DNA of 64,000 nt, taken from NCBI GenBank assembly GCA_965202585.1, contig OZ241832.1, positions 45,508,001 through 45,572,000 on the forward strand. The letters are read 5' to 3'. Each line of letters starts with the position of its first letter. The first letter of the stretch is position 1. The stretch is from Thalia democratica. Lineage: Eukaryota. This document shows positions 446 through 63,253 of the stretch, piece after piece. The notes under the pieces were generated by a model, which was not told the origin of the DNA, did no database searches, and saw only the letters and a program-made list of their open reading frames with translations. Made by a program: the position numbers and the translations under genes.

Positions 446-3400
446 CTAAAATTCAAGAAAATTTTATAACTTTTGCTTTATAATGTTGGTAAGTAATCAA
501 ATGCTTAATAGTTATTTTATTTAAGCAAATAATCATAGAACTTATCAAAGTTAAAAAGTAAAATCAATAGCAATTTAGTTAATTATTTTTTAAAATAACA
601 TATAGTTTCGAAAACAAATAAATCTTTAAACAAAAGTTAGGGTTATAACTGAAAAATTGTATAGAAAATAAGAATTAAAGTTATAGATTCAAATGGTATT
701 TAAGATGCATAGTAATTTTGTTTTTTGTAATGGATTTTTTATTTTAATTTATATTCTAGAATTCTAGATGACTAATATTTTTGTAACTATAACTAATTTA
801 CAACCTTTTAAATTATAGATACAATTTATGCATGTTAACTATATAAAAAACACATACTTATCATCTTATATTTGAAGTAAATACTTTTTTATGACTCCCT
901 AGAACTGTGTTATTTACATAGAGAAACACCACTAGTTAATAATAAGTTTGGTACTTTTAATTTTTTTTTGATATATTTTGTATAAAAAAAAATATTTTGC
1001 TTGACCTTTTATTAGTAAACATTAATAACAGTTTATAATTATTAGATACTTAAATTTAAAATATTTCAAGTTAATTAAAATCCTTTTAATAGTATACACA
1101 ATCTTTAGCAGAACAAAAAAATTAATATTAGTTTAAATATCAAACAGAAATACTATAATAATCAGCAAAATATTAAAATAATCAGCAAAATATTAACTAA
1201 CTTAAGTATATCCATCACTAAACATATGATCCACGTTACTAAGGAAAGCAATAGCCAAGGGGTGGCATTCATACTTATTAACTTCTTTTCAGATGCCCAT
1301 GCCAGATGTTCAACTAAATAAAAAGCTTGTCCAAAAATATTTGAAATTATTTGAACAACACGTAGAAACAAGTGCTCCTAAATATTAAATGTAGGCATAA
1401 GTAATGAGAATAGCTAATTGAAACAAAATTATAGTTCTTAAAGTTTATAACAATAACTTAAACAAAAACTAAAAATTGAGAAATTTATACTCTTTAAATA
1501 AAATGTATCTTAATAATTGAAAAAAAAAAAAGAAGAACTAGCTAATACAATTAGTAAAAGCATCTTTCCCACTAAACTTTAAAAAACTTATTATTTCGTA
1601 AAATAAAACCTATAATATTTTTAGAAGTCAAATTTGTAAGAACTACCAATATTTATGAAAAATATTAAATTAAACTAAAAAATTAAACAACTTAAAAAAA
1701 AAAATATTTTTGTTAGGTATGTGTGTACTGAAAATAACACTATGAATATATTTTAAATAATTTTTTATAAAAAAAGTTAAATTAAAGTTTTAAAACTTTT
1801 ATCTAAGTTAAAAAATATTATACTATTTCGTACTTAACTTTGATCAATTTTTTTGAAGGATAATAATTTTTATACATATAATTTATATCAAATAAAAGTT
1901 AAAGGGACCAGAGAATTATACTTGGTGAGCTGTACAGTGACCACTAATAATTTTGAAGTTTTTTCCAGTTTTTCTAATCTTCTTCCAAGTTGTAAAAAGT
2001 AAAAATTTTATATCCCTTTTAAGTAGGAAGTTAAATCTAAGATAAAAACATTCTTACTAATTTGACATTACTAAATAGGCACTGTTATTCTTCTTTAAAT
2101 TCTTTCAGAGAGGCTTGACAAATGTTTTTGGCAAATTTTCTCCAGGATGTTAAAAATACACAATTTTTGGTCTGTTTTTAGTTTAAAGATAAGTTTAAGG
2201 TAAAAAGTGTGTTAAAAAGTATAAAAACATTGAAAAGATGCTGTAAAGCTACTATAAATGTGTTTTCTAATAAAATAATATATTGATTATGACAATTTTT
2301 TTTCATATAAATCATATAGTGTATGGTAGATTTTTTGTGTCAAATCAAAATTTTTCTACTTAACATTTAAAAATTGTTTAAAATTCCAGGTTTATTTTTT
2401 TCCAAATTTCTTAAATTCCAACCCTGTTTCTGAACTAAGTATATTTTTTAATGTCTACAAAAATATAGAAATTTCTAAAAACCAGTGGGCACCTTTTTTC
2501 CCATAAAAGTAGCCATTCCTTAGTATAACAGGTTTAAAGAGATTAAAAACTAACTGATCACCACCATTCAAAAATTTATTGTGATTAGTCTTATTTTTAA
2601 TAAAATGATTCTGTTAAGATTTCAATTCAGTAATGCATTGTTTCTAGATTATAGATGAATTTTACAAACTCTTAAGGTCTAGTCTTGAAATCATTACTTA
2701 CTACTTTATATGTTTATTAACTTTGTGAATAAGTAGCCTTAAAGTTTTTCAACTATATATTATTTTGTTAAAAAAAATCAGTACTTACTATACCTTTTTC
2801 AATGATAACAAACAATGAACTTTACAACAAGATCAACAACAACAGCATCCGAGACAATCCTACAACCGGTTTTGTCCTTATTAGGACTCATCAGCCAGGA
2901 ATAGTCAGAAAAAAGTACTGAAGTGACCGTTTATGGGTAAAATTTAAAAAAATGACACAGCTAAATCATTCACAGCCCAATGTCTCAGACATTGTCAGCT
3001 TTTTCAATGAAAATGTGATACAAAATCAAGCAGGAAATTCTCATCATGTCACTTCGCCATTGGTTTTTTTTTTTATAAACTTTTATTTTAATTCTTTTAA
3101 ACTACATATTTTTTTGACTCTTTTTAGTAGAATGACGAGTTAAGTAAAAAGTACTTTAAGTGTGTTATATAGTATATAGTTTTCTCTTAAAAATAAAAAC
3201 TAATTTTATATTATTCTTAACTATTCCTTATGTTATCTTAATTTTATTATTTTATTTATAAAATACTTGCTAAATACAAGTTTTTCAATCCTTTTTTTTT
3301 AAGTTATCAGTCTTACCTTTACTTGAAGCTTCAAGCTGCTGTTGCTGAGGAATAAATTCATTAAATAATAAATTAGACAATATTAGTGACCAAGTTTTTT

Positions 3401-4146
3401 TATTATGTATTTAGTTCAAGGTTTGTTTTTTCCTAAGTTTTTAAATTCTGGGTTTTTTCAGGCCAAGTGGCCATCCTGCAATCAGCTGTTTCAAATTAAG
3501 TTTGAACTATAAAATACTCACCTAATAAAACTAATCACTAACAGACTATAACTTAAAACAAACTACAAAACCTTTGATAGTATAAATAATTACTTAAATT
3601 AAATAATTTTTTTATGTAGACTTATTTCAATAGTTTTTCAGACATCTATCTTTCTATTCCTTTAACATAAACCAGGTAATCAAGAGCACAATGAGTTCAA
3701 TATCTAAAAGTATTACTGAATATCAGTAAATATTACTGTTCACCGTTCAAATCCTCCTGGTAGCTAGATTACTGGGACCTGCCAAAGCACCTGGCACTTT
3801 TTAGTCTATACTTAATAATATTTTGTTTAACATTTCAAAAAATAACTGCTTAGAATATCTATATGTGAATAATACAAAAATTAAAACATACCTGATTACT
3901 TCCTGTACCATACTTAAGACAATATGCGACCATTGATGAATCATCAAACAACCTTAAAACAACTCTGCAAGCATTTAGCTCAGAAACAACTAAAAATAGC
4001 TTATTAGCTATTAGTTTGTTTTTGTTTTCAATTAAACCACCTAAAAGTAAAGAACAATAACTTGTACACCTTATTACCTTGTCCCTTCCTCTATAGCTTT
4101 CGAGGTAATGGACATAATTTTTGAAAACTTTTTCAAATTTCATCAT
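407..4146 (-). CDS. PEX11G: Peroxisomal membrane protein 11 gamma; 5' part of gene (3 coding exons visible, 3' end off the left edge)
   Basis: Spliced translation MMKFEKVFKNYVHYLESYRGRDKVIRCTSYCSLLLGG...CRVVLRLFDDSSM...GTGSNQ|EHLFLRVVQIISNIFGQAFYLVEHLAWAS...LK|SLWKIF matches, from memory, the PEX11-gamma motifs LESYRGRD, CRxxLRLFDD, EHxAWA and SLW. Exons 3892-4146 (phase 0), 1202-1377 (phase 2), 407-445; all GT-AG. Confidence 0.9.
1202..1377 (-). CDS. PEX11G: PEX11G coding exon 2
   Basis: atatttag|GAGCAC...CTTAA|gttagt; encodes EHLFLRVVQ...EHLAWASEKK...WLLLSLVTWIICL (hydrophobic segment). Confidence 0.88.
2800..3000 (-). mobile_element. Hammerhead-bearing repeat family, copy A (in PEX11G intron 1)
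   Basis: 2926-3000 aligns to 7966-8040; 2810-2852 aligns to 63211-63253 (37/43); 2800-2825 resembles 8121-8146. Confidence 0.7.
2858..2900 (-). ncRNA. Hammerhead ribozyme-like motif, copy A (type I, degenerate: GAAA to AAAA, GUC to GUU)
   Basis: Minus strand reads UCCUGG CUGAUGA GUCC uaauaa GGAC AAAAC CG GUU GUAGGA. Stem II is intact, stem III is the palindrome ACCGGU, and stem I is UCCUG/UAGGA. Confidence 0.8.
3892..4146 (-). CDS. PEX11G: PEX11G coding exon 1
   Basis: ATG at 4146 or 4143; 255 nt; ends CAG|gtatgt; encodes LESYRGRDKVIR and CRVVLRLFDD. Confidence 0.9.
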
Positions 4147-5210
4147 GTACTTTCAAGTAAAAACTTTGAACTAAGTTACAAATTCTTATTTTTAATTTCC
4201 CTAATAAATAACTTTTTTCTAAAATGATTGGGATTAGGGAATTTGCCGAAAACCAAGTTAACCCAAAAAAAAAAAAAAAAAAATTCAAGCTAACTATAAG
4301 AAAGACAATGCACGTATCTTTGCATTCATCACAGTACAAAACATTTTTATTATTTAGTTATTCTGATGAAAAAAAATCTATGTTTTATAAAAGCAACTAA
4401 ATTAAAAAAAGAAAACATTAGTAAACTTTTTTTGGTAGAGTCTCTAGCTCTACTCTCTAATCTACTATAGTAGTGTATTTGATTGTATGTTTTATAATAA
4501 AAAACTACTACTAAGTAAGTAGTACTATACTAACCATAGGAATTGTAATTTACAGATATTTTTTGTTTGTTAAACTTTGGTTTTGTTTTGCTTAGTTTAT
4601 TCGATTTTAAATTTTTTTTTTATTTAATAAACTAGGTAATCATTAAATAGTTCTGTTACGTGATTTTTGTTTTGTTTCAGAATAAAAATAAAAATCGTCG
4701 GCAAGTTATGTATATAAGAAAAAATAGGAAATAGAAAAAGCCAAGAAATCTAAAACTTAAAGCACAAAAAGTTTAGAAAAAAAAAAGTTTACCTACAACG
4801 TTTATTTTAAAATATAAAACAATCAGACTTAAAGTTTAAGTAAAAATGTTTTTTTATGACACAAACTTAGCACAGTTTGTATAAAAAGTTTTTTTTAGCT
4901 TTTACTCAATTCAATAGATAAATAAACAAGTAATTTGTTTTTACGAAGATTGTATTTTTAATAATTTTAGTAATTTTGGCTATCTTTATGAAAACCGAGA
5001 AATTACGCTATTATTTAATAAACACAAGTGATTAGACTGCATCGCTAATCCATCAAATCAACAATAGTCCATGTAAATTGTTTATTAACGACAAAAAAAA
5101 CGCTTATAATTTTTTGTTTAAGGGCTTATTTATGCACAAAAAAGATGTTTAGTTATCGAGTCGTACACCACTTGGATAAAGTTAAACTTCTTGTCCTGGA
5201 CATGTAACAA

Positions 5211-5253
5211 TTTGCGTCCTAGTTTCGTCCTTATCGGGACTCATCAGGCAGAC
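5211..5253 (-). ncRNA. Hammerhead ribozyme-like motif, copy B (core intact, cleavage triplet GUC to GAC)
   Basis: Minus strand reads GUCUGC CUGAUGA GUCC cgauaa GGAC GAAAC UAG GAC GCAAA. Confidence 0.8.
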
Positions 5254-5508
5254 AGAGTCACAATAAATTGCTCTATCAGTGAAAACTAAATGTGCTTAGT
5301 ACTTTCTTAGTACTTTTGAACTTAAACTTTGTTTTTAAGTACAGCCAAAAAACTGACGCGACCAAACTGTTCAAAATTTAACGTTTTAGACATTGTCAGT
5401 TTCAATGTTATATTATAGTTTACGCCTAATTGTTTAACGAACTAGTAGTTATTTCGGCTATCTGTAGAAAAACGGAGATTTTACACCAACCATCATTTCA
5501 ATAAAAAG

Positions 5509-5560
5509 CACGAAACCAGGTCGCAGATTGTAACACTGACTGTTGTTGATTGTCGAGCGA
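5509..5560 (+). mobile_element. 3' half of hammerhead motif plus downstream arm, copy D (opposite orientation to B)
   Basis: Plus strand reads ACGAAAC CAG GTC GCAGATTGT...CTGTTGTTGATT. This matches the GAAAC-stem III-GUC-stem I 3' strand and the downstream arm of copies A and C; the CUGAUGA half is missing. Confidence 0.6.
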
Positions 5561-6467
5561 TGTAGATTAGTTCTGATTGTGTTTTTGATAATAAGAAGTA
5601 AAGTTATATTGCTTGATAAAAACAAATAAAAACTAACTAAACTATATTTAAGACATCAGACGTTTTTTTCCAAAAAAATACATTTGGATACAAGTTTTTA
5701 CGATAAAAGTAGTAAGTAGTATTTTTAAATTTCATTATAACTAGATTTTATTATAAAATTATGGTGTACTAAGTATAATTTTATCAATTTTTATCTATGA
5801 AACGGTTTTTTTTTTACAATTTTTAATGTAAAATTAAGACTGTATCAAAAAGTAACGTATTTTTGATAGGAAATTGTTGGTACTTATAGGTCATTTAATT
5901 TTTTTCAAAAATACTTTAATTTTGTTTGTGGAAATTAATTATTACTTCAGTTTACCAAAATATATTCTTAAAAGATTAATTTTAATGATAATATTTAGTC
6001 TGACGAAGACTTAAAGCAAAAACTTTAAAGTTAGAACCATATGTTAACTACTTTTTTGTTTAAATCATTAATATAATTTACTTATTTTGTACATAACGTA
6101 TAAAGCACTATAATAGAAACATTAATTTAAACAATGTAATATGGTCTTATTTATTTTCTTTATACTTTAAACCAAATTTATCAAAAACACTTTTGCTCAC
6201 TAATGTTATTATAATCCTAATGATACCAGCAAAAAATGTTAAAAGTTAGTATTGGCCGTTATGAGATAGTATCAAAACAAAACGTTGTTGCTGTAATTTT
6301 ACTCTTTTATTGCATCAGTTAGGAAAATTTTCAGCTGTTGTCCTAAAGTAATTACAATAAAAAAAGCAACTGTGATTTAATGTAAAATGAGAGTAGCTTA
6401 AATCTAACTCACATCTAGTACACCCTCTGTTTTTTAAAATACAAACTTTAGTTATTAGCCTTTAAAC

Positions 6468-6897
6468 CAGGGTTTCCCAAACTTTTTTGCAAAAGGCACT
6501 CTAAACAGAAATTTAAAAAAAAAAAACTATGGACCCCTCTGAAGATAACTCAAAAAACTACTATTAAAAACACCTAAGATTTTTTTTTTTCTTTATCTTT
6601 AAGTCCAGAATATCTAGTGTAAGAGTTTCAAAACTACCATTAACAATACCTATGACCTTTTTTTGGCTCTTCATCATCAAGTTCAGAATTTCTAGTGTAA
6701 GTTTCAAAACAACCATTAAAAACACTTAAGACCTTTTGTTTTGCTCTTCATTTTCAGGTCCAGAATATCTAGTGCAAGTTTCAAATTACGACCTCATGGC
6801 AACTCTGCGGCCCCTTTACAGCTCATGGCCCTTCGTTTGGCCCCTTTGCTCCTCATTGCTTCCGTGGGGGCCACTTGACCCTCTTTAGGAAACCCTG
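6468..6897. mobile_element. Non-autonomous hAT-type MITE (430 bp)
   Basis: TIRs CAGGGTTTCCCAAA / revcomp CAGGGTTTCCTAAA; 8-bp TSD ctttaaac / ctttagac (7/8); internal ~75-bp tandem repeat x2.3 at about 6602-6785. Confidence 0.8.
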
Positions 6898-7841
6898 CTT
6901 TAGACTTACCAGGCCATACAATTAGTTATAAACTTTTGTAATATAAAAAAGTAACGTGGATAATAATATTTATTTTAATATTTTAGGTTCTGAGTGAAAA
7001 ACTCTCTGTCTGTATTTAACAATAAGTATAAACTTTGTAATATTGTCCAAAGTAATTTACTTTGTAAATATAATGTTTTTGTTTATAAGTATCCAATCAG
7101 TTGTTTCTTTGTTTTTACAAAAAATTTTAAGCAAAACAACTTGTTAAAGAAAACTTTAGTGAAGTTTTTTAAACAAAGTGCTTCAAAATATTCTAACACA
7201 AAAAATTAGATAAATGCTCAATAAGTTTATATTAAAATTCAAAATATTTGTATTTTGTTAGTAAATAAAGTTAAACTTTTATCTCCTAGTAATCTAACTT
7301 AAGCATTAAAAAAAATCTTATTACTTATTATTTATAAGATGTTTGCTTCTTACAAGTTTTACTAAAAAGCTTTTAGAAAAAAATAACCAACTAGCAAATA
7401 AATAGTCGTGTTTTTATAAATAGTTTTTAAGAATAAAACTAGAAAAAAACTTGTTCCTTTTTTATATTGCAGTAAAGTATGCTTTTTACTGTGTTTTCGT
7501 CATATCAATTAAATATAGATTAGTTATGTATTGAACCTCTATTCTAAAACGGTATCAGCAAGAGAGCAACAGCGTAGTTGGTTTGTCGAAAAAAAAAACT
7601 TATACTAAAGTAGAAAGAACAAAGTACCTAAAAAACAATTGTTGATCACTAAAAGTTTTATGTAGTAGCTACTGACATGCAAAAGTTAATACGTAAATTT
7701 ATGTCGAAGTTAATAAAAGCTAGCTTTTCATAAGTTTATGAATTAGAAAATTTAAGAAGTAAAACAGAAATCGATTTTGGAGTTTTTTGTTTAAAATTCA
7801 AGTATTTAAAAATGAAAAAACTTTTCATTACGAATATAAAT

Positions 7842-8149
7842 AACTTTACCACACAACAATCTACGACCGGTTTCGTCCTTATTAGGACTTTTCAGGCAAG
7901 CATAGACGCGAGAAACCGCTGTTGCGGTATAACCAAGCGGGCTCAAGTGGATATGCTCTGAAGCGACCGCTTGTGGGTAAAGTCAAAAAAATTGACGCTG
8001 TCAAATCGTTTACAGCCAAACGTCTTAGAAATTGTCAGCTTATTGTGACTACCCTCGTTTGATCAGTTTTAAACATTATTTATTACGGCCACCATCAAAA
8101 AAGGTGAGATGTTTCGTACCATCAATGATAAATGATGAACTTTACCACA
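7842..8149 (-). mobile_element. Hammerhead-bearing repeat, copy C: one 296-nt monomer plus the start of the next
   Basis: aactttaccaca occurs at 7842 and again at 8138. The sequence preceding 8138 (tcaatgataaatgatgaactttac) matches the sequence preceding copy A (tcaatgataacaaacaatgaactttac). Confidence 0.6.
7859..7901 (-). ncRNA. Hammerhead ribozyme-like motif, copy C (CUGAUGA to CUGAAAA, remainder canonical)
   Basis: Minus strand reads GCUUGC CUGAAAA GUCC uaauaa GGAC GAAAC CG GUC GUAGAU. Confidence 0.8.
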
Positions 8150-8344
8150 TGACTGTTAATAAGTATTTTTATCTTTAGTAGTAATTACTTGTGATAAAAA
8201 CTTTCTACTAATCACAGACTGTGCTGTCACAAAATTGCCGGTAACAATTACTTGAAATATTAATACTTATCAAACGTAACATTGACAATGTTGTCATATT
8301 GCCTGAGAATAAGGTAATAGCAGGTGGTATTTATACTATACTTT

Positions 8345-14139: not shown

Positions 14140-54750
<40,611 letters not shown>

Positions 54751-62930: not shown

Positions 62931-63210
62931 TTTTAGACCCTAGCTTGGTCAAAAAATAATTGAGTATGCCAACAAACAGACTATACTAATAAATGTTGCT
63001 TGATAAATAAATTACAATAATTATTTGTGATACACAACGGCCTAAATCGCGTTTTACCGGAAATAGGGAGTGAGTTTTTTTATACACCTTTTTTCGGTGC
63101 ATAACTTATTTAAAAGATATAACAAAACACATTTCATTTTTTCTTAAATTTATTTGAGTACTTTCGAAGTAAGTCTTGTAAAAAATTGTATCTTACTAAT
63201 TTAAACTAAA

Positions 63211-63253
63211 AAACAATAAACTTTGCCGCACGACCAACAACAACAGCATCCGA
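63211..63253 (-). mobile_element. Fragment of the hammerhead-bearing repeat family (arm downstream of the cleavage site)
   Basis: 37/43 identical to 2810-2852, including the identical caacaacaacagcatccga. Confidence 0.65.

What the first reader, a model, noticed from the sequence alone, without database searches (positions are those of the whole stretch)
2858..7901. Dispersed repeat family carrying a minimal type I hammerhead ribozyme (retrozyme/Penelope-type)
Seen: three minus-strand copies read stem I - CUGAUGA - GUCC n6 GGAC - GAAAC - CG - GUC - stem I, and a fourth half-copy lies on the plus strand. A (2900-2858): CUGAUGA GUCC uaauaa GGAC AAAAC CG GUU. B (5253-5211): CUGAUGA GUCC cgauaa GGAC GAAAC UAG GAC. 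C (7901-7859): CUGAAAA GUCC uaauaa GGAC GAAAC CG GUC. D (5512-5527): GAAAC CAG GUC GCAGA. Each copy has a different lesion, so the majority consensus is a complete hammerhead core. Stem II is invariant while its loop varies. Stem I differs in sequence but still pairs (UCCUG/UAGGA in A; the UCUGC of B is complementary to the GCAGA of D). Established: CUGANGA, GAAA and NUH form the hammerhead catalytic core. Type I hammerheads with a tiny palindromic stem III (here ACCGGU) occur in Penelope-like elements and metazoan non-LTR retrozymes and typically cleave as dimers. Inference: this is a self-cleaving-RNA mobile element family of this genome. The class is known; whether this family is described cannot be judged without a search.
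Basis: partly seen in the sequence, partly recalled or inferred. Interest (0 to 1): 0.9.

Follow-up and report, generated by a model that had tools for sequence, protein, structure and literature searches.

The report
Dead copies of hammerhead retrozyme repeat
The window holds four old, broken insertions of an abundant 327-base mobile repeat that carries a self-cutting hammerhead RNA motif; this is an ordinary member of the animal "retrozymes" described in 2020, and its insertion scars match those of Penelope-like retroelements.

Summary
Three minus-strand hammerhead-like motifs lie at 2900-2858, 5253-5211 and 7901-7859, and a plus-strand half motif at 5512-5527. Shuffled sequence gives none.

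They are decayed copies of a 327-nt non-coding repeat. The repeat occurs in long 327-bp tandem arrays and in dispersed short copies.

The family fits animal non-LTR retrozymes (Cervera & de la Peña 2020):
- a type I hammerhead of the usual metazoan kind, with a 1-bp helix III capped by a palindromic CCGG loop, the dimer-dependent kind;
- no ORF, 41% GC, a strongly self-paired RNA, and 7-10 bp target-site duplications.

The insertion scars are Penelope-like: variable 5' truncation, partial tandems, head-to-head pairs, and two fixed 3' ends (+54-59 and +107-120 nt past the cut site). All 10 classifiable pairs carry one end of each kind.

All three window ribozymes carry disabling lesions (A: G12A; C: G8A; B: cleavage triplet lost). 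The "half copy" D is the inverted, 5'-truncated partner of B, not a trans-pairing strand.

The scan has already followed up this family on other DNA of this genome. It is a new member of a known kind and of low interest.

The parts
2804..3000 (-). Copy A: a 5'-truncated retrozyme insertion (unit positions about 154-327, then tail 1-60). The hammerhead is at 2900-2858, with G12->A (GAAA->AAAA), GUC->GUU and a G.G mismatch closing stem I.
   Evidence: blastn to a natural 327-nt unit; 76% identity to a young unit; 84-88% to its closest genomic copies; sequence.
3001..3009 (.). Target-site duplication of copy A: CATTGAAAA on the minus strand. The second copy is at 2804-2796, and its first base is shared with the element end.
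   Evidence: Read directly.
5016..5505 (-). Copy B: an old copy (unit positions about 45-327, then a short tail ending GTTTATTA at 5016), 63% identical to a young unit. The hammerhead is at 5253-5211; its core 5' half is intact but helix III and the cleavage triplet are destroyed (GAAAC-UAG-GAC).
   Evidence: Local alignment; tail rejoined across the nested insertion; best genomic relative only 69% identical.
5066..5205 (.). An unrelated 140-bp dispersed repeat nested in B's tail. It is flanked by a 6-bp duplication, ATTGTT (5211-5206 and 5065-5060, minus-strand reading).
   Evidence: Genome search: 40 scored matches of about 125-140 nt at 75-82% identity, 913 first-look candidates; sequence.
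5502..5644 (+). Copy D: an inverted partner of B, 5'-truncated inside the hammerhead (unit positions about 308-327, then a long tail 1-115). Its 5' end meets B's 5' end at 5502-5505.
   Evidence: Local alignment, 64% identity over 151 columns; sequence; same layout as the head-to-head pairs elsewhere.
7833..8152 (-). Copy C: slightly more than one unit (positions 32-327, then a tail about 1-58 with an internal deletion). The hammerhead is at 7901-7859 with CUGAUGA->CUGAAAA (G8->A).
   Evidence: blastn; 76% identity over 347 columns; sequence.
63207..63253 (-). A tail-only fragment of the same family (unit positions 12-58). It ends at the canonical short 3' end.
   Evidence: blastn, 85% identity over 47 nt; junction shown.

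Best explanation
The window carries four independent, old insertions of a non-autonomous retroelement: A, the B/D head-to-head pair, C, and a tail fragment at 63.2 kb. The element is a 327-nt non-LTR retrozyme. Shown here: the family's unit, its copy number, the hammerhead architecture, the insertion scars, and the disabling lesions in the window copies. Inferred life cycle: tandem or multi-unit loci are transcribed. Two neighbouring hammerheads pair through the palindromic ACCGGU to form an extended helix III and cut after GUC, which releases 327-nt monomers. These fold into a highly paired RNA and are probably circularised by a tRNA ligase. A Penelope-like element (PLE) reverse transcriptase/GIY-YIG endonuclease nicks AT-rich DNA and starts cDNA synthesis at one of two internal sites, about 58 or about 115 nt downstream of the ribozyme cut site. 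It copies a variable length, often more than one unit, and often primes on both DNA strands, which gives head-to-head pairs. The window copies themselves are inert. A lacks G12, C lacks G8 (both catalytically essential by established hammerhead mutagenesis and structure), and B has lost U16.1 and helix III.
For: Family and copy number:
- 1,924 intact cores, reversed control 0; 4,585 within 3 mismatches.
- Tandem period 326-327; 163 distinct full-length units in the fetched loci.

Hammerhead:
- The array variant scores 41-43 bits on Rfam Hammerhead_1, above the gathering score of 34. The dispersed variant scores 38.4 bits on HH9.
- A second retrozyme lineage (335-nt unit) shares 97% of the 31-nt ribozyme but only about 60% elsewhere.
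- Both segments of stem I covary between the two lineages: 39 double-change cells against 12.5 in shuffles (0 of 500 shuffles as high), and 6-22 in slid controls.

Retrozyme traits:
- 41% GC and no ORF longer than 97 aa in a trimer.
- Monomer fold -106.7 kcal/mol, z = -6.4.
- Target-site duplications of 7-10 bp, including CATTGAAAA around copy A.

PLE-type scars:
- Variable 5' ends, partial tandems and head-to-head pairs.
- Of 56 distinct 3' ends, 29 fall at positions 54-59 and 19 at 107-120.
- 10 of 10 classifiable head-to-head pairs have one short and one long tail (P about 6e-4 under independence). The B/D pair shows the same.
- This matches the published PLE signature of 5' truncation, pseudo-LTR tandems, inverted 5'-truncated partners, a tail at one end, and two internal RT start sites (PMC8557442; PMC11167929).

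PLEs are present in the genome:
- 136 GIY-YIG matches.
- A 948-aa RVT_1 + GIY-YIG ORF in a 3,580-bp tandem.

RNA:
- Marine metatranscriptome run X1 holds a 356-nt contig equal to one unit plus a k-1 overlap, at depth 42.8.

Dimer:
- Cofolding places ACCGGU:ACCGGU in trans, at -73.3 against 2 x -34.6 kcal/mol.
Against: - No cleavage, circular RNA or reverse transcription was observed.
- The RNA evidence is contigs from metatranscriptomes that may contain DNA, and a closed 356-nt cycle is equally expected from tandem DNA or multimeric RNA.
- The two PLE families I could fetch have no canonical hammerhead. They show no similarity to the retrozyme and do not lie within 1.5 kb of any sampled hammerhead. 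The autonomous partner is therefore unidentified.
- Within the family, ribozyme columns are no better conserved than the rest (0.91 against 0.92). Selection on the core shows only between lineages.
- The dispersed variant does not reach an Rfam gathering score.
Confidence: 0.83

Rival explanations
1. The copies are solo pseudo-LTR fragments of an autonomous Penelope-like element, not a separate non-autonomous retrozyme family.
For: PLE pseudo-LTRs carry hammerheads and show the same scars (PMC4209133; PMC8557442). A 2026 preprint finds that Xenopus retrozymes are sequence relatives of pseudo-LTRs. Only two of at least three PLE groups in this genome could be fetched.
Against: The unit forms long pure 327-bp arrays without an ORF. 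tblastn with two PLE proteins finds nothing in the 90 hammerhead loci or in the window. On contig C1 from 0 to 57 Mb, none of the 7 GIY-YIG sites lies within 30 kb of an intact family core (coordinates). The two fetched PLEs lack a canonical hammerhead.
Confidence: 0.07
2. The element is mobilised by a LINE-type (non-PLE) reverse transcriptase, as SINEs are.
For: Cervera & de la Peña 2020 left LINEs open as possible mobilisers. 5' truncation and target-site duplications also occur with LINE target-primed reverse transcription.
Against: There is no poly(A) or microsatellite tail at the 3' junctions. Both arms of the inverted pairs carry their own 3' tail pointing outward, unlike L1 twin priming. 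The strict pairing of one short and one long tail (10 of 10) and the two internal start sites match the PLE tail signature.
Confidence: 0.05
3. It is plain satellite DNA spread only by DNA-level processes such as unequal crossing-over or segmental duplication, and the hammerhead is incidental.
For: Arrays tens of kilobases long on C1 near 105.5 Mb and on C73 probably grew at the DNA level. Core columns are no better conserved than flanks within the family.
Against: There are thousands of dispersed short copies with target-site duplications, fixed 3' ends and graded 5' truncation. The flanks of A, B and C are unrelated. The ribozyme is kept at 97% identity between lineages that are otherwise about 60% alike, and stem I shows compensatory changes.
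Confidence: 0.03
4. The three motifs are host-recruited, working cis-ribozymes that process a transcript of this locus.
For: Three copies lie on the same strand within 5.1 kb. Exapted intronic hammerheads exist in amniotes (cited in PMC7229834).
Against: Each copy has a lesion at a catalytically essential position. The copies are of different ages (63-76% identity to a young unit), and copy A has its own target-site duplication. Rfam scores are 21-24 bits.
Confidence: 0.02

Closest known systems
Metazoan non-LTR retrozymes (Cervera & de la Peña, NAR 2020, PMC7229834)
   Same: Type I hammerhead inside a 170-400-nt tandem repeat; no LTR, PBS, PPT or ORF; GC under 50%; target-site duplications longer than 4 bp; a highly self-paired monomer RNA; co-existence with PLEs.
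   Different: The family sequence is not found in the held literature. The host is marine and, by unchecked earlier notes, probably a pelagic tunicate, a group not mentioned in that paper. Circular RNA is not shown here.
Amphibian satellite 2 / axolotl HHR_Amex1 retrozymes (330-bp unit)
   Same: Helix III is a single base pair capped by a palindromic tetraloop, so efficient cleavage needs two ribozymes acting as a dimer. The unit length is almost the same, 327 against 330.
   Different: No sequence homology was tested. The paper describes most invertebrate retrozymes as efficient monomeric cleavers, so this family behaves structurally like the vertebrate type.
Penelope-like elements and their insertion signature (Craig et al. 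2021, PMC8557442; Frangieh et al. 2024, PMC11167929)
   Same: Graded 5' truncation, partial tandems, an inverted 5'-truncated partner, an extra 'tail' at only one end, two internal RT start sites downstream of the hammerhead, and AT-rich targets.
   Different: The element has no RT/GIY-YIG ORF. The tail is about 57 nt, against 30-40 bp in described PLEs. Its hammerhead is the canonical type I, not the PLE minimal variant. The two PLE families sampled here have no canonical hammerhead.
Plant LTR retrozymes (Cervera et al. 2016, PMC4918200)
   Same: A non-autonomous retroelement whose RNA is cut by hammerheads and is expected to circularise.
   Different: Plant elements have type III hammerheads in true LTRs, a PBS and PPT, 4-bp target-site duplications and Gypsy-type mobilisation. 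None of these features is seen here.

Membership tests
Hammerhead ribozyme, type I (Rfam RF00163, clan CL00010) | Conserved core CUGANGA ... GAAA ... NUH | tested here: met
   Met for the family: 1,924 intact cores, control 0. Not met by the window copies: A has G12A, C has G8A, and B has lost U16.1.
Hammerhead ribozyme, type I (Rfam RF00163, clan CL00010) | Helices I and II supported by pairing and covariation; open helix I (type I topology) | tested here: met
   87.5% of cells are paired, against 31-45% in slid controls. There are 39 double-change cells against 12.5 in shuffles (0 of 500 as high). Most of the covariation comes from a single split between two lineages.
Hammerhead ribozyme, type I (Rfam RF00163, clan CL00010) | Score at or above Rfam's curated gathering threshold | tested here: inconclusive
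   The array variant scores 41-43 bits against a threshold of 34. The dispersed variant scores 38.4 bits on HH9 against 52, and nothing reaches gathering score. The window copies score 21-24 bits.
Hammerhead ribozyme, type I (Rfam RF00163, clan CL00010) | Site-specific self-cleavage in Mg2+ | not testable with these tools
   Needs in vitro transcription of monomer and dimer constructs.
Metazoan non-LTR retrozyme | Type I hammerhead within a 170-400-nt unit found in tandem copies | tested here: met
   Period 326-327 with 6-9 copies per fetched locus. Unit lengths range from 322 to 335.
Metazoan non-LTR retrozyme | Non-coding, GC under 50%, no LTR/PBS/PPT, target-site duplications longer than 4 bp | tested here: met
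   41% GC and a longest open stretch of 97 aa in a trimer. Target-site duplications of 7-10 bp. PBS and PPT were not searched for explicitly.
Metazoan non-LTR retrozyme | Highly self-paired monomer RNA | tested here: met
   Minimum free energy -106.7 kcal/mol against -75.8 +/- 4.8 for shuffles, z = -6.4.
Metazoan non-LTR retrozyme | Expressed as linear and circular RNA of unit length | tested here: inconclusive
   RNA-library contigs hold the unit, including a 356-nt contig equal to one unit plus a k-1 overlap. Contigs cannot separate circular RNA from multimers or from DNA carry-over.
Mobilised by Penelope-like elements | PLE insertion signature: 5' truncation, partial tandems, inverted 5'-truncated partner, tail at one end | tested here: met
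   See: 10 of 10 classifiable pairs have one short and one long tail. The B/D pair in the window has the same layout.
Mobilised by Penelope-like elements | Autonomous PLE (RT + GIY-YIG) present in the same genome | tested here: met
   136 GIY-YIG matches. A 948-aa ORF with RVT_1 (E 3.6e-8) and GIY-YIG (21.1 bits, just under the 22.6 cut-off). A second family is 39% identical to it.
Mobilised by Penelope-like elements | Sequence relationship between the retrozyme and a PLE terminal region | tested here: not met
   No similarity to the two PLE loci fetched, and no canonical hammerhead in them.

The most novel reading that the evidence does not exclude
This family may be the first retrozyme documented in a pelagic tunicate, and it may still be active: many copies are 95-100% identical and RNA is present in open-ocean metatranscriptomes. 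Its strict scar pattern would then be direct genomic evidence that a retrozyme is copied by the Penelope 'internal initiation' mechanism acting on both DNA strands. The pattern is two fixed 3' ends 58 and about 115 nt past the ribozyme cut, with one of each on the two arms of every head-to-head pair. This would also place a dimer-dependent, amphibian-type hammerhead outside vertebrates.
Probability: 0.45. Interest if true: 0.4.

Novelty: new member of a known kind. Interest (0 to 1): 0.22.

Why it matters
For this window it matters little. The copies are dead relics of a known class of selfish element, and they explain the local repeats. For the genome, the family is a clean natural dataset of thousands of young copies with sharply defined ends. 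It supports the recent proposal that animal retrozymes are non-autonomous passengers of Penelope-like elements. It could also be used to map where the Penelope reverse transcriptase starts on a ribozyme-bearing, possibly circular, template.

Tried and rejected
- Rfam at gathering score on the window found nothing. It also found nothing on intact dispersed copies; only the array variant passes.
- The Rfam Hammerhead_1 hit for B was rejected as a chimera with a nested unrelated repeat.
- Segmental or tandem duplication as the cause of three copies in 5 kb was rejected. The flanks share no repeat in register, the ages differ, and A has its own target-site duplication.
- The search for the autonomous partner failed. 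Two PLE families were fetched and neither has a hammerhead or any similarity.
- The test 'core more conserved than flanks' within the family was negative (0.91 against 0.92). It was positive only between lineages.
- No target-site duplication could be recognised for C or for the B/D pair. They are probably too old.
- Organism identity: Pfam on four window ORFs found nothing. A protein search found only unnamed metagenome proteins. 'Pelagic tunicate' comes only from unchecked earlier notes, plus marine run labels.
- A literal search of the ribozyme sequence in the held papers found 0 hits.


Full report
**Observation**

- A, 2900-2858: CUGAUGA-GUCC-uaauaa-GGAC-AAAAC-CG-GUU
- B, 5253-5211: CUGAUGA-GUCC-cgauaa-GGAC-GAAAC-UAG-GAC
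- C, 7901-7859: CUGAAAA-GUCC-uaauaa-GGAC-GAAAC-CG-GUC
- D, plus strand 5512-5527: GAAAC-CAG-GUC-GCAGA

A degenerate core pattern with up to 3 mismatches matches exactly these three minus-strand sites. It matches none of 100 dinucleotide-preserving shuffles. Rfam finds nothing in the window at gathering score. At permissive thresholds it gives only weak hits: HH9 at 23.7 and 21.1 bits for A and C, and Hammerhead_1 at 22.4 bits for B.

**What the copies belong to**

The window is contig C8:45,508,001-45,572,000 of an 801.8-Mb, AT-rich assembly.
- The version with the UAAUAA loop occurs 4,585 times within 3 mismatches.
- Copy A's sequence finds many genomic relatives (1,374 first-look candidates). 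These include the edge of a long array on C1 near 105.5 Mb.
- Tandem Repeats Finder gives a period of 326-327 there. Units measured from cut site to cut site are 322-335 nt, mostly 327.

Mapped onto a natural 327-nt unit, the window holds these pieces:
- A = 3000->2804: unit positions 154-327, then 1-60.
- C = 8152->7833: positions 32-327, then a shortened tail.
- B = 5505->5016: positions 45-327, then a tail.
- A tail-only fragment at 63253->63207.

**The ribozyme**

- Array copies (loop UAAAUA) score 41-43 bits on Rfam Hammerhead_1, above the gathering score of 34.
- Dispersed copies (loop UAAUAA) score 38.4 bits on HH9, below its threshold of 52. They pass no gathering score.
- Helix I has two segments separated by an internal loop: CCUGC/GUAGG and CGCGAC/GUCUCG.
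- Helix II is GUCC/GGAC with a 6-nt loop.
- Helix III is a single A-U pair capped by the palindrome CCGG.

This is the canonical metazoan type I hammerhead. The literature describes it as a poor monomeric cleaver that becomes active when two copies form an extended helix III (PMC4209133; PMC7229834). It is not the Penelope 'minimal' variant.

A second lineage in the genome (335-nt unit) is about 60% identical to the first over most of its length, but 97% identical over the 31-nt ribozyme. It carries compensatory helix I sequences: ACUGA/UCAGU and UUCGGU/ACCGAA.

On a 33-sequence alignment the proposed pairs are 87.5% standard, against 31-45% when the partners are slid. There are 39 double-change cells, against 12.5 +/- 2.7 in shuffles, and 0 of 500 shuffles reach that figure. 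Most of this covariation is one evolutionary event, the split between the two lineages.

Within the family, the ribozyme columns are no better conserved than the rest (0.91 against 0.92). That is what neutrally decaying or concertedly evolving copies would show.

A cofold of two ribozyme segments places ACCGGU against ACCGGU in trans and gains about 4 kcal/mol over two monomers. This is an inference, not evidence of activity.

**Retrozyme traits**

- The unit is 41% GC and has no open stretch longer than 97 aa, even read through a trimer.
- As a linear monomer it folds at -106.7 kcal/mol, against -75.8 +/- 4.8 for shuffles (z = -6.4). Its 5' end pairs with its 3' part to form helix I.
- Simple insertions are flanked by 7-10 bp target-site duplications. 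Examples are AGCAGTATAT, CTGTAAA and CTTAATAAA. Copy A in the window has CATTGAAAA at 3009-3001 and 2804-2796.

These are the features listed for metazoan non-LTR retrozymes (PMC7229834).

**How it moves**

Dispersed loci show graded 5' truncation, partial tandems of more than one unit, and frequent head-to-head pairs.

Of 56 distinct 3' termini:
- 29 lie at unit positions 54-59;
- 19 lie at 107-120;
- 8 lie elsewhere.

None carries poly(A).

Fourteen distinct head-to-head pairs were found. In 10 of them both outer ends could be classed, and all 10 have one short and one long tail. The probability is about 6e-4 if the arms were independent.

This matches the published Penelope-like signature. 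That signature includes strong 5' truncation, pseudo-LTR tandems, an adjacent inverted 5'-truncated copy, and a tail present at only one end (PMC8557442). It also matches the in vitro finding that a Penelope RT-endonuclease cuts both strands. That enzyme starts reverse transcription at two internal sites downstream of the hammerhead, and the tail is the stretch between the two sites (PMC11167929).

A 2026 preprint argues from Xenopus sequence similarity that animal retrozymes derive from Penelope pseudo-LTRs.

The genome does hold Penelope-like elements:
- 136 GIY-YIG matches, many in inverted or tandem pairs.
- A 948-aa ORF with RVT_1 and GIY-YIG in a 3,580-bp tandem.
- A second family, 39% identical to the first.

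Neither fetched family has a canonical hammerhead or resembles the retrozyme. No Penelope ORF lies in the window or within 1.5 kb of any sampled hammerhead. The family is therefore non-autonomous, and its partner is unidentified.

**The window copies in detail**

- A belongs to an older subfamily. It is 76% identical to a young unit and 84-88% identical to its nearest copies.
- A has G12->A, and a G.G mismatch next to the core. Its GUU triplet would still be cleavable.
- C (76% identity) has G8->A.
- B is the oldest. It is 63% identical to a young unit, and its best genomic relative is 69% identical. It has lost the cleavage triplet and helix III.
- B's tail is split by a nested 140-bp dispersed repeat (5205->5066) flanked by the duplication ATTGTT. 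Rejoined, the tail ends in the canonical GTTTATTA at 5016.
- The Rfam Hammerhead_1 hit for B borrowed its 3' stem from that nested repeat, so it is spurious.
- D (5502->about 5644, plus strand) begins inside the hammerhead and runs through a long tail of about 115 nt. Its 5' end abuts B's 5' end.
- B plus D is thus one head-to-head insertion with a short and a long tail, like the ten pairs elsewhere.

G8 and G12 are essential catalytic residues by established hammerhead biochemistry. No window copy is therefore expected to cleave.

**Expression**

The unit's 31-mers occur in several marine metatranscriptome runs. Laid on a 1.3-unit reference, run X1 contains a 356-nt contig at depth 42.8. It spans exactly one unit plus about 29-30 nt of overlap. 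That is the form a closed cycle takes in a k=31 assembly graph.

This fits a circular or multimeric RNA. It cannot exclude DNA carry-over, and the tool itself warns of this. Run X11, probably the animal's DNA, holds 7,310 matching contigs.

**Context and prior work**

Earlier notes of this scan had already followed the same family on other DNA of this genome and reached the same class: s1-291866, s1-274414 and s1-271234. My tests are independent of theirs and agree.

Other notes call the host a pelagic tunicate. I did not verify this. The run labels show only that it is marine. No held paper contains the ribozyme sequence, and none links retrozymes with tunicates.

**Verdict**

The thing itself is a set of dead copies of a known kind of element. 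It is a new member of a known kind and of low interest.

The most useful by-product is the strict short/long tail pairing. It supports Penelope-type mobilisation of retrozymes.

Noticed in passing
window 5066-5205: A 140-bp dispersed repeat nested in retrozyme copy B, flanked by the 6-bp duplication ATTGTT. The genome has 913 first-look candidates, and scored copies are 75-82% identical over about 125-140 nt. Its family was not identified (SINE or MITE-like).
   Followed up: partly
window 2804-8152: Four retrozyme pieces of different ages lie within 5.3 kb, three on the same strand. The genome-wide density of recognisable cores is about 1 per 175 kb (4,585 in 801.8 Mb).
   Followed up: partly
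L001, L002 (G000:C2:1950550-1953620 and C2:36440522-36443592): A second retrozyme lineage with a 335-nt unit. It shares only the 31-nt ribozyme with the 327-nt family and has a fully compensated helix I. It scores 41.2 bits on Rfam HH9.
   Followed up: partly
L092 (G000:C7:24119000-24124500) and L091 (G000:C8:46440500-46447500): Two Penelope-like element families with intact ORFs of 948 and 896 aa, 39% identical to each other. The first lies in a 3,580-bp tandem. Neither has a canonical hammerhead; L092 has only a CUGAAGA...GAAA core-like string at about 1746-1770.
   Followed up: partly
G000:C1:105484767-105555063 and contig C73: Arrays of the 327-bp unit at least 70 kb long (loop variant UAAAUA), about 82-85% identical between units. 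At the edge of the C1 array lie units of the dispersed type.
   Followed up: partly
window 6554-6785: A 76-bp tandem repeat with 3 copies and 81% matches, lying between retrozyme copies B and C. It is unrelated to the retrozyme.
   Followed up: no
window 47531-49264 (-) and 46068-47192 (-): Two long ORFs (577 and 374 aa) with no Pfam match. The 577-aa product has a 95%-identical and a 75%-identical unnamed relative in ENA metagenome assemblies.
   Followed up: partly
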